From Octopus sinensis (taxonomy: Eukaryota), in NCBI RefSeq assembly GCF_006345805.1, contig NC_043026.1, positions 8,246,001-8,310,000 on the forward strand: a stretch of 64,000 nucleotides of DNA. The letters run 5' to 3'. Shown here in pieces: positions 14,138 to 53,024 of the stretch (positions are counted from its first letter, which is position 1; every line of letters begins with the position of its first letter). A program made the position numbers and the translations under genes. Below the pieces are notes generated by a model. That model was not told the origin of the DNA and ran no database searches. It saw only the letters and a list, made by a program, of their open reading frames with translations.

Positions 14138-14844
14138 ATATATATATATATATATATATATATACCCATACACGTGCTGTTTATGGACATTTTCCTTCTC
14201 AGGATTTTTCTTTTCTCCTTTCTGATGAAGAGCTTATACTTGAAACATGAAAAAACCCACTCTTCTTTCCATCTTCACTGAGCAGTGTTACAGTATTTCA
14301 TTTATCAGCAGTCTGAGCTATTGTAGTACTGCCGGTAGTAGTAGTGGTAGTCAAACAATAGTAGGGCTTCTGTAGTGGTGGCACTACACTTAAAATACTC
14401 TCTGGGTGTTTTGTGATAGCGGCACCATGACAACTAGATGCAGTGTAGACAATTACAATTACAGTACAGGCGGCAGTTGTAGTAAAGCAGAGGTAAAATT
14501 GGTGGCAGTGTAGGTAGCAGTAACACTAAACTTAGCTGCACTTCTAGTTCTGGTAATAACTGACAGGATTGATGTGGCAGTGTTGGTAGTAGTATTATAC
14601 AAACTTGCAGTACAGGCAGTAGCAATAGTGGTGGTAATTGAAATGGTGCTGTTATGACTACAAACCCTCTGGTTTTTTTTACTCTCTCTCTCTCTCTCTC
14701 TAGTTGAAATTCTAGTTCTGGCAGTAGTTGTAGTGGTGATACAGTGGCAGTGTTGGTACTAGTGTCACCCACAACAGGACAGCAGGCAACTGTAGTTGTG
14801 TGGGTAGAAGTGGTTGAATTGATGAAGCTGTCACTACAAGCTTT

Positions 14845-17330: not shown

Positions 17331-18531
17331 ACCTGCTACGATCAATAGCTATGCCCTCCCATATACACACATATACATACACGCACATATATACACACAC
17401 ATCAATTATCACTAATAGTGACTGAGGGTGCAAGGTAGCGCTTACATTGCTAAAAACAAATGTCAAAGACCCCTTATGGCCACGAAAAGTACATCCCTGC
17501 ACTGACAGGGGAGATAACCACAAATCAGTGAGTGAGGTCACTATACTATACTAGCTTCACTTAGGTCATCAGTAGTAGTCCCTCCATCACAGATGGTTAA
17601 GCTAATTCCCAGCTCTTAGTATATAGGCGCAAGAGTGGCTGTGTGGTAAGTAGCTTGCTAACTAACCACAGGGTTCTGGGTTCAGTCCCACTGCGTGGCA
17701 TCTTGGGCAAGTGTCTTCTGCTATAGCCTCGGGCCGACCAAAGCCTTGTGAGTGGATTTGGTAGACGGAAACTGAAAGAAGCCCGTTGTATATATGTATA
17801 TATATATATATGTATGTGTGTCTGTGTTTGTCCCCCTAGCATTGCTTGACAACCGATGCTGGTGTGTTTACGTCCCCGTCACTTAGCAGTTCGGCAAAAA
17901 GAGACCGATAGAATAAGTACTAGGCTTACAAAGAATAAGTCCCGGGGTCGATTTGCTCGACTAAAAGGCAGTGCTCCAGCATGGCCGCAGTCAAATGACT
18001 GAAACAAGTAAAAGAGTATTTACCATATGAATCAATGGATGGTTGGGCAAAATGGTAAAGTGAAAATTATAAAATAACAAAGGAGGCTAAATGTAATATG
18101 GACCCAAAAAGGAAGAATTCAGTTGTCACTAATTGTAACTGATGGTGCAGGGTGCTAGAAACAAGAGCCAAAGACCCTAGCCTAACCATCAGTGATTGGG
18201 TAGTCACTATTGATGGGCCAAGTGAAACTAGCTAATATGGTGACCTCACTTGCTGTGTGGCAATTATCTCCCCTGTCACTGCATAGACATATGCTCTTTT
18301 GTGGGAGTAAGGGTCTTTGACTCTTGTTTCTAGCATTATAAATGCTACCGCACATCCTCAGTCGCTGTTAGTAATAACTGAAATTTTCCTGTTTGGTACA
18401 AGAGGTGGTGCTGCTCCAGAATGGCCACAGTCTGATGAATCAAAACAAAAAATAAAACAAAATGAGAAAAGAAAGTGTAAGGTATGGGTGGGGGGGGGCA
18501 GACGGATTAATAAGGGATAATCTCTACTTAC

Positions 18532-20222: not shown

Positions 20223-21219
20223 CTGATGCGAAAGAGAAATAAAAAAATTAAAAGAGGGAAAAGAAGAGAAAGAAAGCAAAGAAATACTGAAAGGAAAGAA
20301 AGAAAGAAAGAAATAAAGAAGATGTGATTGTGGGTTTAAGAAGCTTGCTTCCCAATCACATGGTTTGGGGTTCAATTCTGCTGCATGGCACCTTGAAAAA
20401 GTGTCTTCTACTATAGCTTTAGAATGACCAAAAGCCTTGTGCATAAATTTGCCAGATGGAAACTGAAAGAAGCCTATCGTGCATATAGGCATCAGGGATG
20501 TGCTGCCTAGGTAGGTAATGCTTACCTTGAATAAACTAGATCAGCAACAACATTTTCCTTTTATGGCAAAATATGCAACATCGATGTTTCCTAGGGCTAA
20601 ATGGTGGTGGTGTAATTCCCCTACGGGACTGTCACATTGAGTTGACAGTATACGACCACTATATCGCTCCACCACTGCTCATGTCTCTCTGAGACATTTA
20701 GAAATTCAATATTTCTAATTTCGGTGATCAGTAAAAATTTTTTTACTGAAAATAGGATATATTTGCGAAGAGGTTGCAGTCATCTCAGCGAGCGAGGCAG
20801 GCTACCCTGGACTGATGACGAGCAATACACTCAGAAACATATGTCTTCAGGTGCTTAGTCCCAGGTGGCGGGGGTGATTGCCTGCCCTTCGCAAATATAA
20901 GGACACAGAAAATGTATCAAAGCCGACAGGAGACGTCGATGCTTCCTAGGGCTAAACAGCGGTGATGTCACATTGAGTTGACAGTATACGACCACTCTAT
21001 CACTCCACCACTGCTCATGTCTCTCTGAGACATTTAGAAATTCAATATTTCTAAAGTATTATATAAGCTTAAAGCTTATACCGATCACCATGTACAGGAA
21101 AACCTACTTTTTCCTGTCGAGGGCTTATATGCCCCATTGTTAGACTATTTTATTTAGTCATTTCACGGTGGTCTCTTATAAGCTCTAAGCTTATAAAATT
21201 CTATTTTCATTATTTACAG

Positions 21220-21250: not shown

Positions 21251-21890
21251 TATAGGTGCAAGAGTGGCTGTGTGGTAAGTAGTTTGTTTACCAACCACAT
21301 GGTTCCGGGTTCAGTCCCACTGCGTGGCACCTTGGGCAAGTGTCTTCTACTATAGCCTCGGGCCGACCAATGTCTTGTGAGTGGATTTGGTAGATGGAAA
21401 CTGAAAGAAGCCTGTCGCATATATGTATATATATATATGCGTGTGTGTGTCTGTGTTTGTCCCCCTAGCATTGCTTGACAACCGATGCTGGTGTGTTTAT
21501 GTCCCCATTACTTAGCGGTTCGGCAAAAGAGACCGATAGAATAAGTACTGGGCTTACAAAGAATAAGTCCCGGGGTCAATTTGCTCGACTAAAGGCAGTG
21601 CTCCAGGATGGCCGCAGTCAAATGACTGAAACAAGTAAAAGAGTAAAGAGTATATATATGTATGTTTGTGTGTCTGTGTTTGTCCCCCCCATCATCGCTT
21701 GAAAACTGATGTTGATGTGTTTACGTCTCCGTGACTTAGCAGTTCAGCAAAAGAGACCAATAGAATAAGTACTAGGCTTACAAAGAATAAGTGCTGCGGT
21801 CGATTTGTTTGACTAAGGCGGTGCTCCAGCATGGCCGTTGTCAAAGGACTGAAACAAATAATAGAATGGTAATAAAACTCGTCCCCTAAC

Positions 21891-22915: not shown

Positions 22916-23639
22916 AAAGAACTTCAGATAAGTTTATTTTGGCTTTTATTCAGACACAGTCTACCTAAGACTATATCATCTTGTTGTTTAGCCCAAGGTC
23001 ATTCCTCATCCAGCAGACCTGATCAAAGACGTTCCAGCTGTGACCATCATGCTTTTCATTCAGACAGTGTATCTAGGACCACATTATCTAAAGTATACTT
23101 CTTTCTTGTTGTTTAGCCCCAGGTCGGTCCTGATCCACTACACCTATGATCAAATGCGTTTCAGCTGAGACCATCTTGTCATTATTCCAGCATAGTGTAC
23201 CTAGGACTACACTAATGTGCCCCACCACCACCACCACCACCACCACTACCACCATCACCACCACCACCACACTTTAAAAATTTTTTAGTTGATTTTCCTT
23301 TTTAGCTGGCTGAGTGACCCCAGAAGAGTGTCAGTTTCCATAGGATACGCAGTGTGTGAGTGTGTGTATGTGCATACGTGAGTGTTTGTGTGTATGTGTA
23401 TATGCGTGTGTGCACAGGTGTGTACCTTTGCCGTGATATCACATAATGGTTGCAAATGAACATCAGCATCACACAAGTGATGTTGTTTGTATCTTGTCTT
23501 CTGTGTTTGGTGATGAGGAGAAACATTCTGTTGCTTGGAAACAGATGACGGTTGGCAACATGTAGGGTCTCTGGCTGTAGAAAATCTGCCTCACCAAATT
23601 CCACCTGACCTATTCAAGCCTGGAAAATGGATGTTGACC

Positions 23640-24089: not shown

Positions 24090-24181
24090 TGTTTTGTTAC
24101 CGAGACTCCGTTTCTGTGTGCACTTTCAAACAGTTGATTTATCTTTGCCTCGTCACTGTCAAAATGGCTTTGGTAGAATTT
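24090..24181 (-). CDS. GUCD1: GUCD1 exon: KFYQSHFDSDEAKINQLFESAHRNGVSVTK(Q)
   Basis: TTACAG acceptor, GTGAGT donor, 92 nt, phase 0/2. Matches GUCD1 FY.KHFD.EE.RVNQLF. Confidence 0.92.
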
Positions 24182-24249
24182 CTGTAAATTAGAGAAGGAA
24201 CCGATAAACCTTTTTGATACTATAAATCAAAATCAAAATCGATCAACAT

Positions 24250-24910
24250 CAATGGAAATTGCAGCTGTGATACCAGTGCCGGTGGCACGTAAGCGAACCA
24301 TCCGATCGTGGCACGTAAAAAGCACCATCCGATTGTGGCCGTTGCCAGCCTCGCCTGGCCCCGTAAAAAGTACCATCCGACCGTGGCTGTTTGCCAGCCT
24401 CGCCTGGCCTCCCTGCCGGTGGCACGTAAAAAGTACCATCCGACCGTGCCCGTTTGCCAGCCTCGCCTGGCCCCATGCCGGTGGCACGTAAAAAGTACCA
24501 TCCGACCGTGGCTGTTTGCCAGCCTGGCCTGGCCTCCCTGCCGGTGGCACGTAAAAAGTACCATCCGACCGTGGCCGTTTGCCAGCCTTGCCTGGCACGT
24601 AAAAAGTACCATCCGACCATGGCCGTTTGCCAGCCTCGTCTGGCACCTGTGCCGGTGGCACGTAAAAAGTACCATCCGACCGTGGCCGTTTGCCAGCCCC
24701 GTCTGGCACCTGTGCCAGTGGCATGTAAAAAGCACCCACTACACTCATGGAGTGGTTGGCATGAGGAAGGGCATCCAGCCGTAGAAACACTGCCACATCA
24801 GATTGGAGCCAGGTGCAGCCTTCTGGCTTCCCAGACTCCAGTTGAACCGTCCAGCCCATGCTAGCATGGAAAGCGGACGCTAAATGATGATGATGATGAT
24901 GATGATGATT
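24250..24910 (+). mobile_element. SINE-like element with internal ~55-60-bp tandem units and (TGA)n tail
   Basis: About 7 units of ggcacgtaaaaagtaccatccgaccgtggccgtttgccagcc, followed by an RTE-like 3' end. Other copies at 11690-12125(-), 51290-52080, 53530-53800 and 62375-62610. Confidence 0.8.
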
Positions 24911-26113
24911 TCGACTGAAATTAATTATCTTCATTCCGATTAATATATAATCCTCATACTTGTGAACACAAACTTTAGCAAGGTTACCGCTGTCACCCTT
25001 GCCACCAACCACTTCCTTTCAGCCAATTCAACATGTGAAACCATTCATCCAGGAACATTTCTTTTCCTCCCTCTGTCCCCCCCACCCTGATTCCTCTCTG
25101 TTGAAAAATGTATCAATAGGTGCAGGAGTAGCTGTGTGGTAAGTAGCTTGTTTACCAACCGCATGGTTCCGGGTTCAGTCCCACTGCGTGGCACCTTGGG
25201 CAAGTGTCTTCTACTATAGCCTCGGGCCGACCAATGCCTTGTGAGTGGATTTGGTAGATGGAAACTGAAAGAAGCCTCTCGTATATATGTATATATATAT
25301 ATAATGTATGTGTGTATGTATATGTTTGTGTGTCTCTGTTTGTCCCCCCAGCATTGCTTGACAACCGATGCTGGTGTGTTTACGTCCCCGTCACTTAGCG
25401 GTTCGACAAAAGAGACCGATAGAATAAGTACTGGGCTTACAAAGAATAAGTCCCGGGGTCGATTTGCTCGACTAAAGGCGGTGCTCCAGCATGGCCGCAG
25501 TCAAATGACTGAAACAAGTAAAAGAGTAAAAGAGATTAAACCATCGAAGACTCTTCCATTTCTCTTGGGTATCAAACAAATACACATTATTTGCCGTTTC
25601 CTCTCCTGTCTCTGTATTTAGTCTTTTGTACAATTTCAGAGCATACAAAAAATCTAATGCTCTTAGGTTAGACTTTTTGGTGGGCAACCAGATTTGAACA
25701 CTCTCAAGTGTAACTGCCCAAAACTGTAAGGACAATCTGGAAACTTGACTGATGAAAGAAGGCCTTTTTTTTCCTGACCACCTGTGTATCATCTATCTGT
25801 CTGGATATTTTATTGTGCTTTATTGCATTTTTGTTCCATTTTATATATATATATATATATCGACTTAATTAAGTTTAATTTAATTTAATTAGGCTGGTAT
25901 GCCATTAAAAACATCGAAACAATGCATTGTCTAAAGATGAATAGGGTAAATGTTTTTTTAATTTTCCTTTAATTTCTGAATTACTATTAATTGGCGGTTT
26001 GAGTCCTGGCTGCTCTTTCTAGTGGGTCGAATGGCCTATTTGAGGCCGTTCCTCAATTGTTGTTGAATATATATATAAATGAAGTTTAACGCAGGTATAA
26101 ATTAAATACTTTT

Positions 26114-26200
26114 ACTTCCGACACATGTTTCGAAGATTTCACTATTATTATTCAAAAGAATAAATGGTATAAAACAATGCAATCTTCTCTTCAGGGAAGT
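26114..26200 (-). ncRNA. Type I hammerhead ribozyme motif, intact core
   Basis: Minus strand reads ACUUCC-CUGAAGA-GAAGAUU...AAUCUUC-GAAAC-AUGU-GUC|GGAAGU. Stem I is 6 bp, stem II is 7 bp with a G-C closing pair, stem III is short and self-complementary, and the triplet is GUC. Confidence 0.8.
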
Positions 26201-26475
26201 GAAAAAACGAAACTCATCAATAAGACATTTTAACAGAAAATGATGGATATGTATAGTGATTTACTGAACGCTATGTAAATTTCATTTAATCAAGATATCC
26301 TTGGCCTGAAGAGTAGCCTCCGTTCCTTAACGCTTGTATACACACATACACACACGTATTTACTTTGCTTTCAAATGGGTGAGGGTTGGCGACAGTAAGT
26401 GCCACTAGCCATGGAAGATCTGCCTCAAATATGCACAGCCTGACCCATGCAAGCGCGGAAAAGTGGACATGAATC

Positions 26476-26926
26476 GATGATGATGATGACAATTATGATG
26501 ACGATATGATGATGACGATGCTGATGGTAATGGTGAGAAAGATAATTATAAAGATGATGATGATGGTAATGATGACGATGATGGTGATGATGATGATGAT
26601 GGTGATGATGGTGATGATGGTGATGATGGTGATGATGGTGATGATGATGATGGTGATGATGATGATGGTAATGATGACGATGATGGTGATGACGATGGTG
26701 ATGACGATGGTGATGATGATGGTGATGCTGCTGGTGATCCTAATGATGATGGTGATGATGATGGTGATGATGGTGATGATGATGATGGTGATGATGATGA
26801 TGGTAATGATGACGATGATGGTGATGACGATGGTGATGATGGTGATGATGATGATGATGATGGTAATGATGAGAAAGATAATTATAATGATGATGACAAT
26901 GGTGATCCTAATGATGATGATGATGA
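26476..26926. repeat. (GAT/GGT)n trinucleotide tract adjacent to an exon donor
   Basis: Direct reading; the M/V-rich ORF is an artefact. Confidence 0.95.
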
Positions 26927-26941
26927 GTTCAGGGTCCTTAC

Positions 26942-27041
26942 CTGTTCAGCATAATTTTTATCTGCCCCCAAGGTGACCGTGAAGAATTTCGTGACCACCC
27001 CATGGTACTTCAGCAGGTAGGCAAGATGGATTGTCCAGACA
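26942..27041 (-). CDS. GUCD1: GUCD1 exon: (S)VWTIHLAYLLKYHGVVTKFFTVTLGADKNYAEQ
   Basis: TTTCAG acceptor, GTAAGG donor, 100 nt, phase 2/0. Matches GUCD1 IWTIDLAYL...GV.....T.TLGVD. Confidence 0.92.
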
Positions 27042-27419: not shown

Positions 27420-29985
27420 GGACCTACGAGCCAATGAGGGAGACCTCTACATGGTAGTTAGACCTGGTAGAAAAAACAGTCAAATATCCCTCAAATCACA
27501 CCTTGCTTATGTATGTATAAACCAATGAGGCAGACCTCTGTATGGTAACTAGACTGGGAGAAACAGCAGCCAAATCTCACTCAAATCAAGCCCTACTGTC
27601 TTATGCCTACTTGTATGAGCGAATCAGTGGGACCTCTACATGGTAGCTAACTTGGTAGAAATCACAGCCAGATCATAACCTACAATCTTATGTATGAGCC
27701 AATGATGGAGACCTCTACATGGTAGCTAAATCTGGCAGAAATAACAGCCAAATCTCCCTCAAATTACATCCTATTATCTTGTGTATGAGCCACTGAGGCA
27801 GACCACTGCATGGTAGCTAACTTGGTAGAAATAACAACCAAATCTCCCTCAAATCACAACCTACTGTTTTATTAGGAATGAGCCAATGAGGGAGATCTCT
27901 ACATGATAACTAGACCTGGTAGAAATAGCAACCAAATCTCCCTCACATCACATCTTAGTGTCTTAATGTCTATAAGTGAGCCAATCAGGGAGACCTCTAG
28001 ATGGTAGAAATCACAGCCAAATCTCTCTCAAATTTCTACTACCGTATGTATGAGCCAATGATGGAAACCTCTACATCGTAGCTAGATCTGGTAGAAATAG
28101 CAGCCAAATCTCTCTCAAATTTCTACTACCGTATGTATGAGCCAATGATGGAAACCTCTACATCGTAGCTAGATCTGGTAGAAATCACAGCCAAATCTCT
28201 CTCAAATTTCTACTACCGTATGTATGAGCCAATGATGGAAACCCCTACATTGTAGCTAGATCTGGTAGAAATAACAGCCAAATCTCCCTCAAATTACATC
28301 CTATTATCTTGTGTATGAGCCACTGAGGCAGACCACTGCATGGTAGCTAACTTGGTAGAAATAACAACCAAATCTCCCTCAAATTACATCCTATTATCTT
28401 GTGTATGAGCCACTGAGGCAGACCTCTGCATGGTAGCTAACTTGTAGAAATAACAACCAAATCTCCCTCAAATTACATCCTATTATCTTGTGTATGAGCC
28501 ACTGAGGCAGACCTCTGCATGGTAGCTAACTTGGTAGAAATCACAGCCAAATCTCTCTCAAATTTCTACTACCGTATGTATGAGCCAATGATGGAAACCT
28601 CTACATTGTAGCTAGATCTGGTAGAAATAGCAGCCAAATCTCTCTCAAATTTCTACTACCGTATGTATGAGCCAATGATGGAAACCTCTACATCGTAGCT
28701 AGATCTGGTAGAAATCACAGCCAAATCTCTCTCAAATTTCTACTACCGTATGTATGAGCCAATGATGGAAACCTCTACATTGTAGCTAGATCTGGTAGAA
28801 ATAGCAGCCAAATCTCTCTCAAATTTCTACTACCGTATGTATGAGCCAATGATGGAAACCTCTACATTGTAGCTAGATCTGGTAGAAATAGCAGCCAAAT
28901 CTCTCTCAAATTTCTACTACCGTATGTATGAGCCAATGATGGAAACCTCTACATTGTAGCTAGATCTGGTAGAAATAGCAGCCAAATCTCTCTCAAATTT
29001 CTACTACCGTATGTATGAGCCAATGATGGAAACCTCTACATCGTAGCTAGATCTGGTAGAAATAGCAGCCAAATCTCTCTCAAATTTCTACTACCGTATG
29101 TATGAGCCAATGATGGAAACCTCTACATCGTAGCTAGATCTGGTAGAAATCACAGCCAAATCTCTCTCAAATTTCTACTACCGTATGTATGAGCCAATGA
29201 TGGAAACCCCTACATTGTAGCTAGATCTGGTAGAAATAGCAGCCAAATCTCTCTCAAATTTCTACTACCGTATGTATGAGCCAATGATGGAAACCTCTAC
29301 ATCGTAGCTAGATCTGGTAGAAATAGCAGCCAAATCTCTCTCAAATTTCTACTACCGTATGTATGAGCCAATGATGGAAACCTCTACATCGTAGCTAGAT
29401 CTGGTAGAAATAACAGCCAAATCTTCCTCAAATCACAACCTACTGTTTTATGTATGCATGTGTCAATGAGCAAGACCTCTCTATGATAGCTAGCCTTGTT
29501 AGAAATAGAAGCCAAATATCCCTTAAATCACAACCTATGTATATATGCATTAGTCAACAAAGAAGACCCCTACATAGTAACTAGACTTGTTAGAAATACC
29601 AGTCAAATGTCTCATGTCTATATGCATGAGCCAATGAAGCAGACCACTATATGGTAGCTAACTTGGTAGAAACAACAGCCAAAGCTCCCTATACACTGCA
29701 AGTATATGTATTTATGTATGAGCCAATGAGGGACATATCTACATGGTAACTAGAATTGCTAGAAATAGGAGGCAAATCTCCTGCAAATCACATATTACAG
29801 TCTTATGTAAGTATGAATCAATGGGGAAGACCTCTACATGGTAACTAGACCTGGTAGAAATAGCAGGCAAAGCTCCCAAATCACACCCTTACTGTCTTAT
29901 GTATGAGCCAATGAGGGAGGCCTTTACATGATAGCTAGACCTGTTAGAAATGGCAGCCAAATCTCCCTCAAATGGGATGGTGATT
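27420..29985. repeat. 87-bp tandem array (~29 units), homogeneous core with diverged flanks
   Basis: Period of 87 measured at 28621 and 28708; core 28000-29420 is near identical. Confidence 0.95.
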
Positions 29986-33887: not shown

Positions 33888-35137
33888 CTGCAATAGAAAA
33901 CAGTATCATCATCATCATCATTACCACCATCGTAACGGTCACTCTTTACTCTCTTTTACTTGTTTCAGTCATTTGACTGCGGCCATGCTGGAGCACCGCC
34001 TTTAATCGAGCAACTCGACCCCCGGGACTTATTCTTTTTGTAAGCCCAGCACTTATTCTATCGGTCTCTTTTGCCGAACTGTTAAGTGACAGGGACATAA
34101 ACACACCAGCATCGGTTGTCAAGCAATGCTAGGGGGACAAACACAGACACACACAAGCATATGTATATATATATATATATATATATACATATATACGACA
34201 GGCTTCTTTCAGTTTCTGTCTACCAAATCCACTCACAAGGCATTGGTCGGCCCGGGGCTATACTAGAAGACACTTGCCCAAGTTGCCACGCAGTGGGACT
34301 GAACCCGGAACCATGTGGTTGGTTAGCAAGCTACTTACCACACAGCCACTCCTACGCCTAAGATGGTTAATAATTTTCTGGGTGTCTGCCAAGTCAGCCG
34401 CCAGACGTCGGAGTTTCAATGTGTCCATGCCCAGGGAAGTAAGGCATTCAGAATATGGCAAAAGCCTGATGGAGGGTATTCTGAGAGGGGGTCCTTTTGT
34501 TGCCAACAGCTTTCTGAGTTTTCTCCATCCTATAAGCTTATTCTAGCTACAATACTTTCAGAACATCCTTAACTACTGCTACTGTGTGTGTGTGTGTGTG
34601 TGTGTGCACGCCTTCGTATGTCATACACAGCAAGTGATAGAAACCGGTGTTGGTTTGTTTACAGCCCATAGTGGTTCGGTAAAAGAGGTTGATGAAATAA
34701 CTATGACGATGGAGGGTGGGAGAAAGGGAGGGACAAAAAAAACAAAAACCTCGGAGTGGCTGTGTGGTAAGTAGCTTGCTAACCAACCACATGGTTCCGG
34801 GTTCAGTCCCACTGCGTGGCATCTTGGGCAAGTGTCTTCTGCTATAGCCCCGGGCCGACCAATGCCTTGTGAGTGGATTTGGTAGACAGAAACTGAAAGA
34901 AGCCTGTCGTATGTATGTATGTATATGTACGTATGTGTATGTGTTTGTGTGTCTGTGTTTGTCCCCCATAGCATTGCTTGACAACCGATGCTGGTGTGTT
35001 TACGTCCCCGTCACTTAGCTGTTCGGCAAAAGAGAACGATAGGGCTTACAAAAAAGAATAAGTCCCGGGGTCGATTTGCTCGACTAAAGGCGGTGCTCCA
35101 GCATGGCCGCAGTCAAATGACTGAAACATGTAAAAGA

Positions 35138-35187
<50 letters not shown>

Positions 35188-37829: not shown

Positions 37830-38042
37830 ATCTATACAATATGTTACATTACTCGGTAGTCAAGATAAAACTCTGAGTTTCAGATGCCGAAGTGGAAATC
37901 CACAACACCATCTCTTCGGTTATCTGGCTATTAGCCAGAAATAGCCAGATAACTGAAGAGATGGTGTTGTGGATTTCCACTTCGGCATCTGAAACTCAGA
38001 GTTTTATCTTGACTACCGAGTAATGTAACATATTGTATAGAT
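37830..38042. repeat. Near-perfect palindrome, ~103-bp arms, 7-nt loop
   Basis: Arms differ at one position (hammerhead core U4). Confidence 0.9.
37947..38009 (+). ncRNA. Type I hammerhead motif (right arm of palindrome; mirror copy on minus at 37863-37925 has CCGAAGA)
   Basis: AGAUAA-CUGAAGA-GAUG...CAUCU-GAAAC-UCAGA-GUU|UUAUCU, with a 6-bp stem I. Confidence 0.65.
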
Positions 38043-39125: not shown

Positions 39126-39521
39126 ATTTATTATATAGAAGGAGCTTCTACAGGACTAGTACTGTTTCATTCAAGAGAAATCTTCAGGAAGCTATTTAAC
39201 AAGAATTGTATTAGCATTTATACATTTAGGCAGGTTTAAAGGAGTGGTGGTGGGGGACTTTTTTGGGGGTAGGCATAGCGCAAAATATCATACTTGGGGG
39301 AGTGGTCAAGGAGTCAGTGGTAAGTTAGGTGAAAGAATAGATAAATAAAAAAATAAAAATAAAAAATAAAAAAATAAAAATAAAATGTGTGCACATACAT
39401 ACATAAACACATATACATACACACACACATACGTACACATGTGTGCCTATACATACCTACACATACACACATACACATACACACATACACATACATACAT
39501 ATATACACATATATATACACA

Positions 39522-39566
<45 letters not shown>

Positions 39567-39914
39567 TATATACACAATCCAATACAGGCCCATTCCCTAA
39601 TTTTAATTTTATTATCTTCATTTATTACTTTTGTTATCTTTGATCGCTAGAGCTAAGGATCCTGGCGATGGCAGCATGTCCAAATTGTCTGTCTACTAGA
39701 AGGCAAGTACTCGTTCCCGCACGCACACTCATTAGCACGTACATACACCCATTCGTACACTCATACACATACACGTACGCACGCGTTATATCCATACATA
39801 CAAACATCTACATACGTTCACGTATATACACATACGTACTCGTACCTACAGATTCATGTCTACACTTTAGGAGGCTAGTCTATATATATACACCAATAAA
39901 TATACATATATATG

Positions 39915-39958
<44 letters not shown>

Positions 39959-40331
39959 TACACACACACACACACATATATATACTCCTACATACATATA
40001 CATACCTATATATATATATATATATACCCACACATACATGTACATATATATATATATACATATACATACATATATATACATATATATACATATATATATA
40101 CATATATACATACATACATACACACACACCCATATATATACACCACATACATACACATATATATACATACACAAACATATATACACACACATATATATAT
40201 ACATATACATATATACACATACATACACACACCTACATACATATACACACAAACACATACATACGTAAACATACATACATACATCCATACATCCATACTT
40301 ACATGCACTTATACGCATACACACACCCCCA

Positions 40332-40386
<55 letters not shown>

Positions 40387-40925
40387 TCACACATACATAT
40401 ACAAATATACGCCCACACATACATACATACATACACGTATACGCATACACGCACATACACATATACATGCGTACCCATACACGTGCCCACACGCACATGC
40501 ATCCATATGTATACACCACCACACATATATACACGTGTGCAAGCATACATACATACTCATACACGCACACATACTTACATATACATATATGCACACACTT
40601 ACACACATATATACATACACATATACATGCATACATACATATATGCATACATACACATACACGTACATACACATATACACATGCGTACCCATACACGTGC
40701 ACGCACGCACGCGCATCCATATATATACACACCACACATATATACACGTGTGCAAGCATACATACATACTCATACACGCGCACATACTTACATATACTTA
40801 TGCACACACTTCCCCACATATATACATACACATATACATGCATACATACATATATGCATACATACACACACGCGCACTCATATATACATATATATATACA
40901 CACACATACACATATATACATATAC

Positions 40926-40983
<58 letters not shown>

Positions 40984-41189
40984 CACATATACATACATAT
41001 ACACATACATATATATACACATATACACATACATATACATGCACACATACACACACATACACATACATACATATATATATATATATATACACATATATAC
41101 ACACACATACACATATACACATACATATATACACACATACATACATATACATACACACACACATACATATATACACGGATACACATACC

Positions 41190-41235
<46 letters not shown>

Positions 41236-41722
41236 TATACACATGCATATACTTGTATCTCTACATACTCACATATAAACATATATATATATACACACAC
41301 ACATATATATACATGTACACACACATACACATATACATACATATATACACATGCACACATACACACATATATATATATATACACATATACATATACATAC
41401 ATATATACACATGCACACATACACACATATATATATATATACACATATACATATACATATATATACATATATATACACATACATATACATATACATATAC
41501 CCCCATATATATACATATATATATTATATACACATATACATACTACACACACACATACATATACACATATACATGTATACATACGCAATAATGATACACA
41601 TATATACACATACACACACACAGACAGATGCATATACATACATATATATATAAAATTACATATCTATATAAATACATACATAGAACACATATACACACAC
41701 ATATATACATACATATACATAC

Positions 41723-41754
<32 letters not shown>

Positions 41755-42309
41755 CATATATATACATACATATACATATATATACATATACACATACACA
41801 TGCATATACATATACAAATATACATACACATGCATACACACACACGCGCGCACATACATATACACACACACATATACAAATACATACATACACACATACA
41901 CACACACACATATATATACATACATGTACACATACACATACATATATATATCAACAAGGGAGGGTAAAGTTAATTAGTTATTAATCAAATTCACCAAGAA
42001 TTCAGTATGTAAAGGGACCATTATTATTTTGAGTAAACAATGTTAGAGGGAAAAAATTCTCTAAGTAGTGGAAGAGGCTAAAACCCTTTATTGGCTGCTA
42101 TTTCTAGAAAGTTTAGTATGTGGCAAAGTAATTTATTTTATTTTATTTTACTAAGCCCTAATTATATAATATAATATTTTATACATACATACACATACAA
42201 AACCACATACATTTACACGTATATACACATATACGTACAAGCACATATACATATATACACACACACGCACACGTACAAGCACATACATATATACACATAT
42301 ATATACATA

Positions 42310-42341
<32 letters not shown>

Positions 42342-42566
42342 TCACATATGTATGTATATATGTATAGAATGCATGGGTACAGTAGGAATATACGCATGTA
42401 TTATGTGTGTGTGTGTGTATGCATGCATATTAAAAAAAAAAAAAAAATAAAAAAAAAAAAAAAAAAATAAAAAAATAAAAATAAAAATAAAAAAAAATAA
42501 AAATAAAAAAAAAAAATAAAAAAAAAAATATATATATGTATATATGTTTGCATATGTGAATATATA

Positions 42567-42639
<73 letters not shown>

Positions 42640-43160
42640 GTATGTGCTTGTACGTGTGCGTGTGTGTGTATATATGTATATGTGCTTGTACGTATATGTG
42701 TATATACGTGTAAATGTATGTGGTTTTGTATGTGTATGTATGTATAAAATATTATATTATATAATTAGGGCTTAGTAAAATAAAATAAAATAAATTACTT
42801 TGCCACATACTAAACTTTCTAGAAATAGCAGCCAATAAAGGGTTTTAGCCTCTTCCACTACTTAGAGAATTTTTTCCCTCTAACATTGTTTACTCAAAAT
42901 AATAATGGTCCCTTTACATACTGAATTCTTGGTGAATTTGATTAATAACTAATTAACTTTACCCTCCCTTGTTGATATATATATGTATGTGTATGTGTAC
43001 ATGTATGTATATATATGTGTGTGGTGTATGTGTGTATTATTGTATTGTATATGTGTGTGTGTATATGTATGTGCGCGCGTGTGTGTGTATGCATGTGTAT
43101 GTATATTTGTATATGTATATGCATGTGTATGTGTATATTATATATGTATATGTATGTATA

Positions 43161-43199
<39 letters not shown>

Positions 43200-43621
43200 A
43201 TGTATGTATATATGTGTGTGTATATGTGTACTATGTATGTATTTATATAGATATGTAATTTTTATATATATATGTATGTATATGCTTCTGTCTGTGTGTG
43301 TGTATGTGTATATATGTGTATCATTATTGCGTATGTATACATGTATATGTGTATATGTATGTGTGTGTGTGTATGTATATGTGTGTATATATATATATAT
43401 ATGTATATATGTGGGGGTATATGTATATGTATATGTATGTGTATATATATGTATATATATGTATATGTATATGTGTATATATATATATATGTGTGTATGT
43501 GTGCATGTGTATATATGTATGTATATGTGTATGTGTGTGTACATGTATATATATGTGTGTGTGTATATATATATATGTTTATATGTGAGTATGTAGAGAT
43601 ATAAGTATATGCATGTGTATA

Positions 43622-43673
<52 letters not shown>

Positions 43674-43879
43674 GGTATGTGTATCCGTGTATATAGATGT
43701 GGTTGTGTGTATGTATATGTATGTATGTGTGTATATATGTATGTGTATATGTGTATGTGTGTGTATATATGTGTATATATATATATATATATGTATGTAT
43801 GTGTATGTGTAGTGTGTGTGTATGTGTGCATGTATGTGTATGTGTATATGTGTAGATATATGTATGTGTATATGTATGT

Positions 43880-43944
<65 letters not shown>

Positions 43945-44492
43945 TGTATATATATGTATATGTATATATGTGTATGTGTGTGTATAATATATGTATATAT
44001 GAGTGCGCGTGTGTGTATGTATGCATATATGTATGTATGCATGTATATGTGTATGTATATATGTGTGGAAGTGTGTGCATATATGTATATGTAAGTATGT
44101 GCGCGTGTATGTATGTATGTATGCTTGCACACGTGTATATATGTGTGCGTGGTATATATATGGATGCGCGTGCGTGCGTGCACGTGTATGGGTACGCATG
44201 TGTATATGTGTATGTACGTGTATGTGTATGTATGCATATATGTATGTATGCATGTATAGTGTATGTATATATGTGTGTAAGTGTGTGCATATATGTATAT
44301 GTAAGTATGTGTGCGTGTATGAGTATGTATGTATGCTTGCACACGTGTATATATGTGTGTGTGTGTATACATATGGATGCATGTGCGTGTGTGCACGTGT
44401 ATGGGTACGCATGTATATGTGTATGTGCGTGTATGCGTATACGTGTATGTATGTATGTATGTGTGGGCGTATATTTGTATATGTATGTGTGA

Positions 44493-44545
<53 letters not shown>

Positions 44546-45743
44546 TGGGGGTGTGTGTATGCGTATAAGTGCATGTAAGTATGGATGTATGGATGTATGT
44601 ATGTATGTTTACGTATGTATGTGTTTGTGTGTATATGTATGTAGGTGTGTGTATGTATGTGTGTATATATGTATATGTATATATATATGTGTGTGTATAT
44701 ATGTTTGTGTATGTATATATATGTGTATGTATGTGTGTGTATATATATGGGTGTGTGTGTATGTATGTATGTATATATGTATATATATATGTATATATAT
44801 GTATATATATGTATGTATATGTATATATATATATATGTACATGTATGTGTGGGTATATATATATATATATATAGGTATGTATATGTATGTAGGAGTATAT
44901 ATATGTGTGTGTGTGTGTGTATGTGTATATGTGTATATATATATATGTATATATATATACATATTATGTATATTTATTGGTGTATATATATAGACTAGCC
45001 TCCTAAAGTGTAGACATGAATCTGTAGGTACGAGTACGTATGTGTATATACGTGAACGTATGTAGATGTTTGTATGTATGGATAAACGCGTGCGTACGGT
45101 ATGTGTATGAGTGTACGAATGGGTGTATGTACGTGCTAATGAGTGTGCGTGCGGGAACGAGTACTTGCCTTCTAGTAGACAGACAATTTGGACATGCTGC
45201 CATCGCCAGGATCCTTAGCTCTAGCGATCAAAGATAACAAAAGTAATAAATGAAGATAATAAAATTAAAATTAGGGAATGGGCCTGTATTGGATTGTGTA
45301 TATATATATGTGTATATATATATATATATATAATATATATATATATGTGTGTGTATATATATGTGTATATATGTATGTATGTGTATGTGTGTATGTGTAG
45401 GTATGTATAGGCACACATGTGTACGTATGTGTGTGTGTATGTATATGTGTTTATGTATGTATGTGCACACATTTTATTTTTTTATTTTTTTATTTTTTTA
45501 TTTTTTTATTTTTTATCTTTTTATTTATCTATTCTTTCACCTAACTTACCACTGACTCCTTGACCACTCCCCCAAGTATGATATTTTGCGCTATGCCTAC
45601 CCCCAAAAAAGTCCCCCACCACCACTCCTTTAAACCTGCCTAAATGTATAAATGCTAATACAATTCTTGTTAAATAGCTTCCTGAAGATTTCTCTTGAAT
45701 GAAACAGTACTAGTCCTGTAGAAGCTCCTTCTATATAATAAAT
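39126..45743. repeat. Giant inverted repeat: arms 39126-42350 and 42551-45743, ~200-bp A-rich spacer
   Basis: Unique segments mirror exactly (39140-39340 vs 45530-45730; 39600-39900 vs 44970-45290; 41965-42180 vs 42750-42975). Confidence 0.95.
45676..45726 (+). ncRNA. Type I hammerhead motif at outer end of giant inverted repeat (mirror copy on minus at 39143-39193)
   Basis: AGCUUC-CUGAAGA-UUUCUCUUGAAU-GAAAC-AGUACUAGUCCU-GUA|GAAGCU. Stem I is 6 bp and stem III is a near-perfect palindrome; stem II closes with U-U, so it is degenerate. Confidence 0.6.
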
Positions 45744-49373: not shown

Positions 49374-52162
49374 TGTCGGACTGGCAGTGTGAAGCGGCTG
49401 ACCTCCCTTGTTCGAAGGTTATAATGGATACAGATCGTGTATCAATAGCTATCTTGATGGCGGTGGCCTCATGGAGCTGACTAGCGGCAGCGATTATTCT
49501 TATATCTATAAGAATGCCATATTAATGTGGCGATAACAATTAATTATATATATATGCTCGGAATGGTCAGTGGCAAGAGAGGAAGAGGTCGACCAAGAAT
49601 CCGCTGGCTTGACACCATCAGGAGTGATACCGGAATGGACATAGCCAGTCTGAAAGAAGCGGCCCAGGATAGAACTGACTGGAGGACACTGATCCAACGA
49701 GTGACCGAGGGTCGACTTCGACTGAGCCGATAGAGGGAAACAGGAAAAAAAATTAGTAGGAAAAGTTAGGTTTAAGAGTCTCAATCTTCATCTTATTTTT
49801 CATATGAATTAATAGTGGAGTGGGTATATACACGTCAGTTAATTGCAGGGTTTGTTAACCCCTTACCCAACAATTATTTTGAAAATAAATGTATTTTTTC
49901 AGACATTTTTTATTAGTTTCAGTCAATACATGCTCTATAACTCTTTCATCTATATACAAAGAAAAAAAAATCAAAAGGACTCATTGTCACTGCCAGACGT
50001 ATAAAGTGAGTGAATATACTCTTATATGTCAAAAAAGAGTTTATAATAGACGAAGGAACTCGTTTGCTGTCGATTTTGGCGAGTATCTTTTGACGAGTTA
50101 ACTCGCCAGAGATAGAAAAAAACGATTTCGGTCAAAACGCATATATTCGTTTCTGCCGGGTAAGGGGTACGAGTCCAATCAATCTATATATAAAAATAGG
50201 GAGCTTGACTCAGAGATTGGTGAGGGTTAATTGTGTGCCTTGCTGTTCTGAGGAATATTGATAATACCCTGCTTTCGCTTATTGCTTTAGTAATAATCCT
50301 GTCTTCTATGGGCTTGGATTTGTGGGGCAGTTGATCACAGACCCTGGTATTTAATTTAAATTTACGAACCCCGAAAGGCTAAGTTGACCTCGGCAGACGA
50401 AATTTTCGTTGGCCGACTAACGATTGTGAGAGCTCGCTACTTTATTAATAACTATCAGTATTGCCCGGCATTGTTCGGGTTTGTTTCGACCCTTTAGAAT
50501 GGAATTTTTGAAAAGTAAAAATTTTGCATTATGTAGCTTGTTATTCTCTTTAAGCGAACATTTTTCTGGTTGAAATACACCGAAAAATGGCGACACAGCA
50601 GTAAAAAAAATCGTATAAAATAGGGATTTTCATAGAAAATAAGCACCTTTTTGATGTAAATAATTTTTGGTGTTAACATGGTCCGATTTGAATTTTGTCT
50701 TCTATGGAAGGAAGAGCAAGCCTTCTTCTATCGTACTCTCAATTTTGGTCATCTTGTGCCACAGGGTCTCGGAGGAGATAGTGTTAGTTGAAGGCTACCA
50801 AACCTGCCACACACAGACAACTTCAGCTTTATATATAGAGAGATAATAAAAAAACAAAACAATTTTTCACGTTTGTTTATTTCAATTTATTCCCATGCAA
50901 ACATGGGCAATTAGTATACATATATCATTAGAAAAACTGAAAAAATAAAACAAAAAGAAATATGGAAATAAAATAAATATACAAGTTAAAAAAAAAAACC
51001 CACACAACTTGCCATTCGTCGCCAGATTAAAGAAATGAAATAAAAAGGAGGGGGGTAGGGGCACAGTCTGAGATGTACTCCAGCTTTGGGTTGTCAACTT
51101 CTGACGTTGTCTCAAAGGGCACCTTTGAAACATTTAGGGTATCTTGAGGGCTGTAAATTCAACAGCTTTCTTTCCTTACCCAGGCCTCAATGTAAGGAAA
51201 GGGTGCCACTTATATGTGACACCAGTTATGAGTCTCCTCAAGCACGGCATATTGCCAAAGCTCTTGGGTCACTTATTGTTTATCGGCATTGGAAATTACA
51301 GCTGTGATACCAGTGCCGGTGGCACGCAAGAGAACCATCCGAACGTGGCTGTTGCCAGCGCCGCCCCGACTGGCTTCCGTGCCGGTGGCACGTAAAAAGC
51401 ACCAATCCGATTGTGGCCGTTTGCCAGCCTCGCCTGGCACCTGTGCCGATGGCACATAAAAAGCACCCACTACACTAACGGAGTGGTTGGCGTTAGGAAG
51501 GGCATACAGCAGTAGAAACACTGCCAGATCAGACTGGGCCTGGTGCAGTCTTCTGGCTTCCCAGACCCCAGTTGAACTGTCCAAACCATGCTAGCGTGGA
51601 AAGCGGACGCTAAATGATGATGATGATATATATATATATATATATATATGGCACATAAAAACACCATCCGAGCGTGGCCGTCTGCCAGCCTCGTCTGGCA
51701 CCTGTGTCGGTGGCACATAAAAACACCATCCGAGCGTGGCCGTCTGCCAGCCTCGTCTGGCACCTGTGTCGGTGGCACATAAAAACACCATCCGAGCGTG
51801 GCCGTCTGCCAGCCTCGTCTGGCACCTGTGTCGGTGGCACATAAAAACACCATCCGAGCGTGGCCGTTTGCCAGCCTCGTCTGGCACCTGTGTCGGTGGC
51901 ACATAAAATCACCCACTACACTCTCGGAGTGGTTGGCGTTAGGAAGGGCATCCAGCTGTAGAAACACTGCCAGATCTGACTGGACTGGTGCAGCTTTCGG
52001 GCTCCCCAGACCCCAGTTGAACCGTCCAACCCATGCTAGCATGGAAAGCGGACGTTAAATGATGATGATGATGATGATGATATATATAAGTTAGGTACAA
52101 TAAATTCAGGGTGAATACTTGATAAATGTAAGCACCTGTATATGCCATAGGTGATAGGATAT

Positions 52163-52575
52163 ATGTATCAAATGAAGTAAATGAAAAACAGGATGCAAAG
52201 GATTTTGCGGTACATATGTTTCGGGCTTTATTGAACAACTTATTCTTATATCAATGCATAATTGATATAACAGATAGATCAAAAGCCTTCTTCAGCCGCG
52301 TACAATTACCACATCGAAGACATGTATCACATTATAACAGGTTTGAGAAAAAACCGAGTTTCATTAGGAAAGTAAATCCTCGGTTTATTCTCAAACTTTT
52401 TATAATGTGATACAAGTCTTTGGTGTGGCAATTGTACGCGGCTGAAGAAGGCTTTTGATCTATCTGTTATATCAATTATGCATTGATATAAGAATAAGTT
52501 GTTCAATAAAGCCCGAAACATATGTACCGCAAAATCCTTTGCATCCTGTTTTTCATTTACATCATTTGATACATA
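52163..52575. repeat. Palindrome with ~190-bp arms
   Basis: Identical ORF starts on both strands (52216+ and 52521-); the arms diverge only towards the centre. Confidence 0.9.
52438..52530 (+). ncRNA. Type I hammerhead motif (right arm of palindrome; mirror copy on minus at about 52207-52299)
   Basis: GCGG-CUGAAGA-AGGCUUU...AAAGCCC-GAAAC-AUAU-GUA|CCGC. Stem III is palindromic; A-C mismatch at the base of stem II. Confidence 0.7.
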
Positions 52576-53024
52576 TATATATATATATATACATCTTCCT
52601 ATCTAACTTTTTACATACACACACATGTGAGTGTGTGTGTGTATATATAAAGTTAGATAGGTATAAAAATAGGTAATCTGCTGCAAAGGCAGACAGAAAG
52701 TTGGCCACACAGACAGACAGAGGTACAAAAAGATATAGAGATAGCCGAGATAAACATATAGACAAACAGGACAGACAGACGAAACAGACAGGTAGACAAG
52801 ACAGATACAGATACAGATAACCTGGTGGGTAGGCAGACAGACAGAATGATAGACGTGTAGATATACAGATAGATATACAGGTAGTCTGCTGGGCAGGTAG
52901 ACAAAGAGGTAGAATATGTAAATAATGAGATAAATAGTTTGGAAGGGTGACTTAATCGATGCCATAGAAATTAAACAACTGGCTTCACATATGCTGAACC
53001 AATAGAGCCCAACATTATACAAAC

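What the first reader, a model, noticed from the sequence alone, without database searches (positions are those of the whole stretch)
26114..26200. Intact-looking hammerhead ribozyme on the sense strand of a GUCD1 intron
Seen: the minus strand folds into a complete type I hammerhead with all conserved core bases (CUGAAGA, GAAA, GUC), a 6-bp stem I (ACUUCC/GGAAGU), a 7-bp stem II (GAAGAUU/AAUCUUC) closing a ~42-nt AU-rich loop, and a self-complementary stem III (ACAUGUGU, with G-U pairs). It lies between GUCD1 exons 26942-27041 and 24090-24181, so every GUCD1 pre-mRNA would contain it. Known: short type I hammerheads with palindromic stem III are associated with Penelope-like elements and can cleave as dimers. 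Inference: it may cut nascent GUCD1 RNA, perhaps only at high local concentration or on dimerisation. It is the least decayed of the hammerheads in the window, which hints at either youth or retention.
Basis: partly seen in the sequence, partly recalled or inferred. Interest (0 to 1): 0.82.

Follow-up and report, generated by a model that had tools for sequence, protein, structure and literature searches.

The report
Retroelement hammerhead ribozyme in GUCD1 intron
The motif is a real, intact-looking hammerhead ribozyme, but it is the ribozyme module of a mobile-element family scattered through octopod genomes that landed in this GUCD1 intron recently, so it is an ordinary transposon relic rather than a conserved gene regulator.

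Summary
Window 26114-26200(-) has a complete type I hammerhead: 6-bp stem I, CUGAAGA, 7-bp basal helix II with G10.1-C11.1, GAA, the palindrome-like ACAUGUGU, C17, and a cut site at 26120|26119. It lies sense-strand in the GUCD1 intron between exons 27041-26942 and 24181-24090.

It is not a chance motif. A looser descriptor hit 3 of 300 shuffled windows. Related copies exist elsewhere in the window (inverted pair 52199-52306/52431-52538), in Octopus bimaculoides and in Argonauta hians. Across five distinct copies, 15 of 28 pairs show compensatory changes (0/500 shuffles).

The "42-nt loop" is a conserved long helix II extension (56-70 nt). This pushes the Rfam Hammerhead_1 score below threshold (26.4 vs 34 bits).

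Every copy ends 45-75 nt after the cut site in a (TA)n tract, and one is an inverted truncated pair. That matches Penelope-like or retrozyme-type elements, though no reverse transcriptase was found nearby.

The orthologous introns of O. bimaculoides (371 bp) and A. hians lack it, so it is young, not retained.

As a lone copy its 2-bp helix III is predicted unstable (pair probability 0.04) and the self-duplex is weak (-6 kcal/mol). Efficient cleavage of GUCD1 pre-mRNA is therefore unlikely but untested.

The parts
26114..26200 (-). Complete type I hammerhead ribozyme motif. Stem I 5' strand 26200-26195; core CUGAAGA 26194-26188; helix II with long extension 26187-26132; GAA 26131-26129; helix III/palindrome ACAUGUGU 26128-26121; C17 26120; stem I 3' strand 26119-26114. 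Predicted scissile bond 26120|26119.
26132..26187 (-). Helix II: 7-bp basal stem (G10.1-C11.1), 1x1 mismatch, 7-bp middle stem, 6-bp distal hairpin with UUUU loop. This 56-70-nt extension is a trait of the whole family.
   Evidence: (3 compensatory changes against the O. bimaculoides copy)
26064..26113 (-). 3' tail of the element: AAAAGUAUUUAAUUUAUACCUGCGUUAAAC... ending in a (TA)n tract. A homologous block (..AUGCGUUUU.CUCCA.., then (TA)n) follows the ribozyme in the other copies.
26201..26319 (-). Probable 5' part of the same inserted unit. The boundary is uncertain. It is bounded upstream by a (GT)n tract, a SINE-like fragment (26365-26470) and (GAT)n (26476-26926). Imperfect direct repeats at 26320-26337 and 26046-26063 could be a target-site duplication or a partial tandem.
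   Evidence: weak similarity to the 5' flanks of other copies
26942..27041 (-). Upstream GUCD1 coding exon (..SVWTIHLAYLLKYHGVVTKFFTVTLGADKNYAEQ)
24090..24181 (-). Downstream GUCD1 coding exon (KFYQSHFDSDEAKINQLFESAHRNGVSVTKQ); 1.94 kb downstream of the predicted cut site
52159..52578 (.). Head-to-head inverted pair of 200-nt truncated units of the same hammerhead family (arms 52159-52358 and 52379-52578, 96% complementary). Ribozymes at 52199-52306(-) and 52431-52538(+): GCGG|CUGAAGA|A-GGCUUU..AAAGCC-C|GAA|ACAUAUGU|A|CCGC. Each arm ends in (TA)n. About 5.8 kb upstream of GUCD1 coding exon 1 (46385-46170).
20801..20852 (+). Compact hammerhead-like motif with the same ACAUAUGU palindrome and a short helix II. 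It has a C.A apposition at the base of helix II, is antisense to GUCD1, and sits inside a 146-nt very stable hairpin. Weak match (18.2 bits).

Best explanation
The motif is the self-cleaving module of a short, probably non-autonomous or 5'-truncated copy of a hammerhead-bearing retroelement family of the Penelope-like / animal-retrozyme kind. The family is dispersed in octopod genomes. This copy (about 140-270 nt) inserted among microsatellites in a GUCD1 intron, in the sense orientation, after this lineage split from O. bimaculoides. In the element's own life cycle the ribozyme would cut multimeric or tandem transcripts, with the 8-nt palindrome of two neighbouring copies forming the extended helix III of a double hammerhead. 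That step is inferred from the family architecture and the literature. In this solo intronic copy the ribozyme is transcribed within every GUCD1 pre-mRNA but lacks a partner. Its monomeric helix III (2 bp plus a tetraloop) is marginal. It is therefore expected to cleave slowly or not at all compared with the roughly 1 min Pol II needs to reach the next exon 1.9 kb away, leaving GUCD1 expression essentially unaffected. Its intact look reflects recent insertion.
For: Shown. (1) The motif is real and rare by chance. (2) Homologous copies sit at non-orthologous sites: O. bimaculoides L001 7458-7553 (about 70% identity, same architecture, perfect palindrome ACAUAUGU); window 52199-52306 and 52431-52538; A. 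hians L002 11469-11578 and 15527-15635 (palindrome ACAAUUGU); and a truncated O. bimaculoides copy at L001 about 26625-26700(-). (3) Covariation: among 5 distinct copies 87% of cells pair, against 33-46% when partners are slid. 15 of 28 pairs have compensatory double changes, including all 6 stem I pairs, and 0 of 500 shuffles reach this. (4) Rfam Hammerhead_1 aligns full length but below threshold. (5) Element-like features: every copy ends 45-75 nt after the cut site in (TA)n, and one is an inverted 5'-truncated pair. These match published Penelope-like element traits: ribozyme near the 3' end, (TA)n targets, adjacent inverted truncated copies (PMC8557442) and a short palindromic helix III with dimeric action (PMC4209133, PMC6765202). 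(6) The motif is absent from the orthologous introns of O. bimaculoides and A. hians, and no copy is shared between species. (7) Monomer helix III pair probability is 0.04, self-duplex energy is -6.0 kcal/mol, and there is no second same-strand copy inside the gene. Published Penelope-like hammerheads cleave poorly in vitro even as dimers (PMC4209133).
Against: No reverse transcriptase or GIY-YIG reading frame was found next to any copy or among ten window ORFs, so the link to Penelope-like elements rests on architecture only. Only about 133 kb of octopod DNA could be searched, so copy number, consensus and age are unknown. Invertebrate type I hammerheads with a 2-bp helix III plus tetraloop can cleave efficiently as monomers when loop-loop contacts exist (coral retrozyme, about 0.8 per min; PMC7229834). 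Activity of this copy therefore cannot be excluded by folding alone. The covariation alignment was fitted to the model, which favours the structure. O. bimaculoides could have lost the segment by deletion rather than never having had it.
Confidence: 0.8

Rival explanations
1. The intronic hammerhead is active in cis and tunes GUCD1. It would cleave the nascent pre-mRNA, as a monomer or with chaperone help, in kinetic competition with splicing of the 2.76-kb intron, as proposed for the CPEB3 ribozyme.
For: The core is fully intact, with G10.1-C11.1, stable stems I and II and sense orientation. Helix III of 2 bp plus a tetraloop is the form that works as a monomer in invertebrate retrozymes (PMC7229834). 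There is precedent for an intronic ribozyme whose half-life matches the time for the polymerase to reach the next exon (PMC10919898).
Against: It is not conserved at the orthologous site in two other octopods. No loop 1 / loop 2 tertiary motif is recognisable because helix II is a long rod. Helix III pair probability is 0.04. In a 240-nt context the minimum-energy fold replaces stem I with other pairings. Penelope-type hammerheads are slow in vitro (PMC4209133). From general knowledge, co-transcriptional intron cleavage need not block splicing (exon tethering).
Confidence: 0.07
2. The motif acts only as a dimer in trans, pairing through the palindrome with another GUCD1 transcript or with transcripts of other family copies. 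Cleavage would then depend on local RNA concentration.
For: The palindromic 8-mer is the most conserved part of the family (ACAUAUGU / ACAAUUGU / ACAUGUGU). Dimeric cleavage is documented for this hammerhead class (PMC4209133, PMC6765202).
Against: The self-duplex is only -6.0 kcal/mol, corresponding to a dissociation constant in the tens of micromolar and far above nuclear pre-mRNA concentrations (inference). Documented dimers come from tandem copies on one RNA. The only other strong copies are more than 26 kb away and outside the coding part of the gene.
Confidence: 0.05
3. It is a chance hammerhead look-alike in AT-rich intronic DNA with no evolutionary history as a ribozyme.
For: Rfam reports nothing at gathering threshold. 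A genome of more than 40,000 such windows would yield some chance hits to loose descriptors (0.01 per window).
Against: Homologous copies in three species carry the same core, the same palindrome and extensive compensatory changes. The strict descriptor hit 0 of 300 shuffles.
Confidence: 0.02
4. It is an intronic box C/D snoRNA (UGAUGA at 26218-26213 and CUGA in the 'core') rather than a ribozyme.
For: There are weak Rfam C/D-box matches overlapping the site (snR75, 16-19 bits, E 0.16-0.24). Introns are the usual home of snoRNAs.
Against: All scores are far below gathering thresholds. The boxes are only about 20 nt apart. The family conservation pattern follows hammerhead helices, not C/D boxes or guide regions.
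Confidence: 0.01

Closest known systems
Hammerhead ribozymes of Penelope-like elements (Cervera & de la Pena 2014, PMC4209133; Lunse, Weinberg & Breaker 2017, cited in PMC6765202)
   Same: Type I topology, a very short helix III with a palindromic sequence implying a double-hammerhead dimer, and a helix II larger than in the canonical form (7-8 bp in Schistosoma min-HHRs). Also high sequence variability with covariation within a genome, position near the element's 3' end, (TA)n insertion sites and inverted truncated copies (PMC8557442).
   Different: Helix II here is a 56-70-nt rod, far longer than the described 4-8 bp plus a small loop. Stem I is a clean 6 bp. No RT/GIY-YIG reading frame or pseudo-LTR pair was found beside any copy, so membership in a Penelope-like element is not shown.
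Animal non-LTR retrozymes (PMC7229834; bioRxiv 10.64898/2026.07.22.740005)
   Same: Low-GC, roughly 200-400-nt non-coding units carrying a type I hammerhead whose helix III is 1-2 bp plus a palindromic tetraloop. They are present in molluscs and are reported to be related to pseudo-LTRs of Penelope-like elements.
   Different: Retrozymes are defined by head-to-tail tandem repeats that release circular RNAs. Here the copy is solo and the other window copies form an inverted pair, not a direct one. Canonical loop 1 / loop 2 contacts are not recognisable.
Rfam Hammerhead_1 (RF00163)
   Same: Full-length alignment to all 45 model positions, including the paired 8-mer at helix III.
   Different: 26.4 bits against a gathering score of 34, because of the 52-nt insertion in helix II. 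Standard Rfam annotation therefore misses it. Counts such as the 235 Hammerhead_1 hits in giant squid (PMC6962438) would miss this subfamily.
Conserved intronic hammerheads of amniotes (HH9/HH10; de la Pena & Garcia-Robles 2010, cited in PMC6765202) and the intronic CPEB3 ribozyme (PMC10919898)
   Same: A self-cleaving motif on the sense strand of an intron of a protein-coding gene.
   Different: Those are conserved at orthologous positions over long evolutionary times. This one is absent from the orthologous intron of two other octopods.
Schistosoma Sm-alpha / Sj-alpha SINE-like elements with hammerheads (described in PMC6765202)
   Same: A short dispersed non-autonomous retroposon carrying a type I hammerhead.
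   Different: No Pol III promoter boxes or tRNA-like head were identified here, and this was not specifically tested.

Membership tests
Hammerhead ribozyme, type I | Conserved catalytic core: C3 U4 G5 A6 N7 G8 A9, G12 A13 A14, A15.1-U16.1, H17 | tested here: met
   CUGAAGA / GAA / A..U / C17 all present. The same core is present in related copies.
Hammerhead ribozyme, type I | Three helices around the core, with helix I open-ended and helices II and III closed | tested here: met
   Stems of 6/7/2 bp. Stems I and II have pair probability of at least 0.98. Helix III is only 2 bp plus a tetraloop, with probability 0.04 as a monomer.
Hammerhead ribozyme, type I | Helices supported by compensatory changes among relatives | tested here: met
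   15 of 28 pairs have double changes, 0 of 500 shuffles reach this, and slid controls give 2-4. Caveat: only 5 distinct sequences, and the alignment was fitted to the model.
Hammerhead ribozyme, type I | Reaches the Rfam RF00163 gathering score | tested here: not met
   26.4 bits against 34. No hit at gathering threshold.
Hammerhead ribozyme, type I | Site-specific self-cleavage giving 2',3'-cyclic phosphate and 5'-OH ends | not testable with these tools
   Needs in vitro transcription or RNA end mapping.
Penelope-like-element hammerhead | Short helix III with a palindromic sequence able to form a double hammerhead | tested here: met
   ACAUGUGU here; ACAUAUGU and ACAAUUGU in relatives.
Penelope-like-element hammerhead | Lies in the pseudo-LTR of an element encoding RT plus GIY-YIG endonuclease | tested here: inconclusive
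   No RT or endonuclease domain in ten window ORFs, and no long ORF upstream of the A. hians copy. All copies seen are 110-270-nt fragments. No full-length element was available.
Penelope-like-element hammerhead | Insertion signatures: (TA)n target, ribozyme near the 3' end, adjacent inverted 5'-truncated copies | tested here: met
   compared with PMC8557442.
Non-LTR retrozyme | Two or more head-to-tail tandem units (about 170-400 bp), each with a hammerhead | tested here: not met
   The region is single-copy in the window and has no tandem period. The 52-kb copies are inverted. Only a faint 14-18-nt direct repeat flanks the unit.
Exapted conserved intronic ribozyme (HH9/HH10- or CPEB3-like) | Presence at the orthologous intron position in related species | tested here: not met
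   The O. bimaculoides intron is 371 bp without the motif. The A. hians intron (L002 24674-26641) has no model hit.

The most novel reading that the evidence does not exclude
A recently inserted but catalytically competent hammerhead with an unusually long helix II cleaves GUCD1 pre-mRNA co-transcriptionally. This would make it a young, lineage-specific ribozyme attenuator of a host gene, caught at the very start of possible exaptation.
Probability: 0.05. Interest if true: 0.6.

Novelty: new member of a known kind. Interest (0 to 1): 0.25.

Why it matters
The practical value is for annotation. Octopod genomes carry a hammerhead subfamily whose 56-70-nt helix II drops it below Rfam's threshold, so standard pipelines undercount ribozymes in cephalopods. 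The covariance model built here (R2) could be run genome-wide to find them. Biologically it adds one more case of transposon-borne hammerheads sitting in the sense strand of introns. If the solo copy were active, it would offer a natural test of how much intronic self-cleavage a gene tolerates, but nothing here suggests that it is.

Tried and rejected
- Rfam at gathering threshold on the whole window, and at E<=10 on 1.1 kb and 64 kb, gave no hammerhead. The filters drop it; it appears only on a 136-nt stretch.
- A homologue search with the 63-aa two-exon peptide found nothing. A 204-aa composite worked.
- nhmmer with a three-sequence alignment returned nothing usable. I replaced it with covariance models R1 and R2.
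- A three-frame translation of 3 kb upstream of the A. hians copy and a Pfam scan of ten window ORFs showed no reverse transcriptase or endonuclease.
- The energy of the trans double-hammerhead could not be evaluated, because the complex is pseudoknotted in cofold notation. Only the energy of the 8-mer duplex is given.
- The weak hit at 50856-50942(-) (21.7 bits) has a degenerate core. It lies in a block orthologous to O. bimaculoides L001 4761-5133 and is not counted as a hammerhead.
- The sequence upstream at 26365-26470 looked like a second ribozyme tail but is a SINE-like repeat also present at 23531-23631.
- The paper by Lunse et al. is not held in the library.
- The sub-threshold 'mir-9' match at 37904-37968 is a perfect 43-bp inverted repeat without the mature miR-9 sequence.

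Full report
**1. The observation**

On the minus strand, 26200..26114 reads ACUUCC CUGAAGA GAAGAUU[42 nt]AAUCUUC GAA ACAUGUGU C GGAAGU.
- All invariant hammerhead positions are present: C3-A9, G12-A14, A15.1/U16.1 and C17, together with the G10.1-C11.1 pair typical of natural hammerheads.
- A descriptor I wrote (stems I/II/III of at least 4/4/2 bp) finds this as the only hit in the window, with stems of 6/7/2 bp.
- The same descriptor hit 3 of 300 dinucleotide-preserving shuffles. A version requiring at least 6 and 7 bp hit 0 of 300.
- RNAfold keeps stems I and II (pair probabilities at least 0.98).
- The '42-nt loop' is not a loop. It forms a further 7-bp helix and a 6-bp hairpin.

**2. Rfam**

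Nothing reaches the gathering score, and the speed filters drop the site in larger searches. On a 136-nt stretch, Hammerhead_1 (RF00163) aligns over all 45 model positions at exactly 26114-26200(-). The score is 26.4 bits against a gathering score of 34, E 7.6e-05, with a 52-nt insertion in helix II. The insertion is what makes this copy invisible to routine annotation.

**3. Gene context**

Their joined translation matches Pfam Guanylate_cyc_2 at E 1.4e-19. The ribozyme is therefore sense-strand and intronic, 1.94 kb upstream of the next exon.

**4. It belongs to a repeat family**

A protein search returned GUCD1 of Octopus bimaculoides (90% identity) and Argonauta hians (62%). Their loci were fetched as L001 and L002.
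- BLAST of the intron against L001 gave a 113-nt match at a non-orthologous place, L001 7464-7573.
- The alignment shows the same ribozyme there: CUUUCC CUGAUGA GAAGGUU...AAUCCUUU GAA ACAUAUGU A GGAA. It has a perfect palindrome and a similarly long helix II.
- Between the two copies, three pairs change on both sides while keeping the pair.
- Covariance model R1, built from them, found an identical inverted pair in the window (52199-52306(-) and 52431-52538(+)) and two copies in A. hians (L002 11469-11578 and 15527-15635).
- A 5'-truncated copy lies at L001 about 26625-26700(-).
- Over the five distinct sequences, 87% of cells pair, against 33-46% when partners are slid. 15 of 28 pairs carry compensatory double changes, including all six stem I pairs. 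None of 500 shuffles reaches any of the five measures.
- The alignment was fitted to the model, which favours the structure, but the slid controls and the completely different stem I sequences (ACUUCC/GGAAGU vs GCGG/CCGC vs UAUCGC/GCAAUA) make chance untenable.
- Model R2 with filters off found no further strong copy in the window. It did pick up a compact variant at 20801-20852(+).

**5. What kind of element**

- Every copy is followed by 45-75 nt of related tail (..AAAGUAU..UGCGUUUU.CUCCA..) and then a (TA)n tract.
- The 52-kb copies are two 200-nt units joined head to head (96% complementary, 20-nt spacer).
- Several copies are cut off just 5' of the ribozyme by a microsatellite or an assembly gap.
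- These traits match published descriptions of Penelope-like elements. Hammerheads sit near the 3' end within pseudo-LTRs. There is a strong bias for (TA)n targets. An inverted 5'-truncated copy often lies adjacent (PMC8557442). Helix III is 1-2 bp with a small palindromic loop that implies dimeric action (PMC4209133, PMC6765202).
- A 2026 preprint relates animal non-LTR retrozymes to pseudo-LTRs of Penelope-like elements (10.64898/2026.07.22.740005).
- I could not show the link directly. No RT or GIY-YIG domain was found in ten window ORFs or upstream of an A. hians copy.
- The locus is not a tandem array, so it fails the defining feature of a retrozyme.
- Imperfect direct repeats at 26320-26337 and 26046-26063 (14 of 18) and at 26327-26340 and 26086-26099 (12 of 14) might be a target-site duplication or a trace of a partial tandem. 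They may also be chance.

**6. Age**

- In O. bimaculoides the orthologous exons are at L001 14141-14242 and 14614-14706. The intron between them is 371 bp, contiguous, and has no ribozyme.
- In A. hians the intron (L002 24674-26641) has no model hit.
- The O. bimaculoides copy at 7.4 kb lies between blocks orthologous to window 50.4 kb and 34.3 kb, where the window has no copy. The window's 52-kb pair lies on the other side of that block.
- No copy is shared between species, so the family was mobile, or turned over, after these lineages split. The GUCD1 copy is a lineage-specific insertion.
A deletion in O. bimaculoides cannot be strictly excluded, because the intron has been heavily remodelled and no clean empty site can be drawn.

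**7. Likely activity**

- In the 87-nt RNA the two helix III pairs have probabilities of 0.04-0.05. The exact hammerhead fold is 0.3% of the ensemble.
- In a 240-nt context the minimum-energy fold keeps helix II but replaces stem I.
- The self-duplex of ACAUGUGU is -6.0 kcal/mol, against -7.0 for the family form ACAUAUGU. By my estimate that corresponds to a dissociation constant of tens of micromolar, so pairing between separate pre-mRNAs is implausible.
- No second same-strand copy lies within the gene.
- Published Penelope-type hammerheads show no detectable cleavage as single motifs and low cleavage as dimers (PMC4209133). Salamander hammerheads with a 2-bp/tetraloop helix III reach about 22% in an hour. 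A coral retrozyme hammerhead with full loop-loop contacts reaches about 0.8 per min (PMC7229834).
- This copy has the 2-bp/tetraloop form but no recognisable loop 1 / loop 2 contact, because helix II is a long rod.
- To interfere with splicing it would have to cut within roughly the minute that Pol II needs to cover 1.9 kb. That is my inference, using the kinetic argument made for CPEB3 in PMC10919898.
- I therefore expect slow or no cleavage and no measurable effect on GUCD1. This is a prediction, not a result.

**8. Verdict**

This is a new member of a known kind: a transposon-borne type I hammerhead. It has one notable family trait, a conserved 56-70-nt helix II that hides it from Rfam thresholds. 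For comparison, a giant-squid genome paper reports only 235 Hammerhead_1 hits by Rfam (PMC6962438). In the 133 kb examined here there are six clear copies that Rfam would miss. If representative, that implies many thousands per genome, though this is a rough extrapolation from one locus.

Noticed in passing
window 20801-20852 (+), within hairpin 20755-20900: Compact hammerhead-like motif (CCUGGA|CUGAUGA|C-GAG..7 nt..CUC-A|GAA|ACAUAUGU|C|UUCAGG) antisense to GUCD1. It is embedded in a 146-nt rod-like hairpin of -61 kcal/mol (z = -4.6). It is single-copy in the 133 kb searched and is not matched by Rfam even at E<=10. It has a C.A apposition at the base of helix II, as do the 52-kb copies (A.C) and one A. 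hians copy (U.U).
   Followed up: partly
window 52159-52358 and 52379-52578: Head-to-head inverted pair (96%) of 200-nt hammerhead-bearing units, each ending in (TA)n, about 5.8 kb upstream of GUCD1 coding exon 1. This is the arrangement described for truncated Penelope-like insertions.
   Followed up: partly
window 26320-26337 / 26046-26063 and 26327-26340 / 26086-26099: Imperfect direct repeats (14 of 18 and 12 of 14) flank the roughly 270-nt unit that holds the ribozyme. They could be a target-site duplication or a remnant of a partial tandem, or they could be chance.
   Followed up: partly
window 24182-26941 vs L001 14243-14613; also window 30148-27041 and 33802-30204 vs L001: GUCD1 introns are 3-7 times longer here than in the O. 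bimaculoides assembly (2.76 kb vs 371 bp; about 3.1 kb vs about 0.7 kb; about 3.6 kb vs about 0.8 kb). The extra DNA is microsatellites, SINE-like repeats and tandem repeats.
   Followed up: partly
window 37890-37982 (+): Perfect 43-bp inverted repeat hairpin (-76 kcal/mol) that Rfam scores as sub-threshold mir-9 (43.9 bits against 58.6). One arm resembles miR-9 but has more than 3 mismatches to the mature sequence. It is more likely a foldback or transposon end than a miRNA gene. It lies in GUCD1 intron 1, antisense.
   Followed up: partly
window 56475-56555 (-): Sub-threshold Rfam matches to mir-981 (33.1 bits, gathering 51, E 7e-6) and mir-745. Possible miRNA hairpin, not examined.
   Followed up: no
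window 25304-25535 and at least 12 other sites (e.g. 5272-5489, 17803-18018, 21419-21647, 34925-35147, 60424-60643): An abundant SINE-like repeat of about 220 bp (84-95% identity between copies), also present several times in the O. bimaculoides locus. A second SINE-like family with an (ATC)n head occurs at 26365-26470, 23531-23631 and around 52040.
   Followed up: no
window about 39400-46000: About 6.5 kb of TA/CA-type microsatellite arrays fill much of GUCD1 intron 1. They produce dozens of spurious mir-297/mir-466 Rfam matches and long artefactual ORFs.
   Followed up: no
window 24282-24736; 27428-27954; 3157-3433: GC-rich 63-nt tandem repeat (3.7 copies or more), a 91-nt tandem repeat (5.8 copies), and a roughly 270-nt palindromic region that matches MIR2646 on both strands (90 bits, gathering 245), probably a foldback element.
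   Followed up: no
L001 (O. bimaculoides GCA_001194135.2, CM046628.1), gene model P0003: The annotated O. bimaculoides GUCD1 protein (176 aa) stops after the exon at 14614-14706, although a further conserved exon is present at L001 19352-19426. The model looks truncated. Assembly gaps (runs of N) abut both hammerhead copies in this locus, as expected for repeats that are hard to assemble.
   Followed up: no
L002 11469-11578 and 15527-15635 (A. hians): Both A. hians hammerhead copies lie in GUCD1 intron 1 (L002 10169-21774) in the sense orientation, like the window copy. With so few copies this orientation pattern cannot be distinguished from chance.
   Followed up: no
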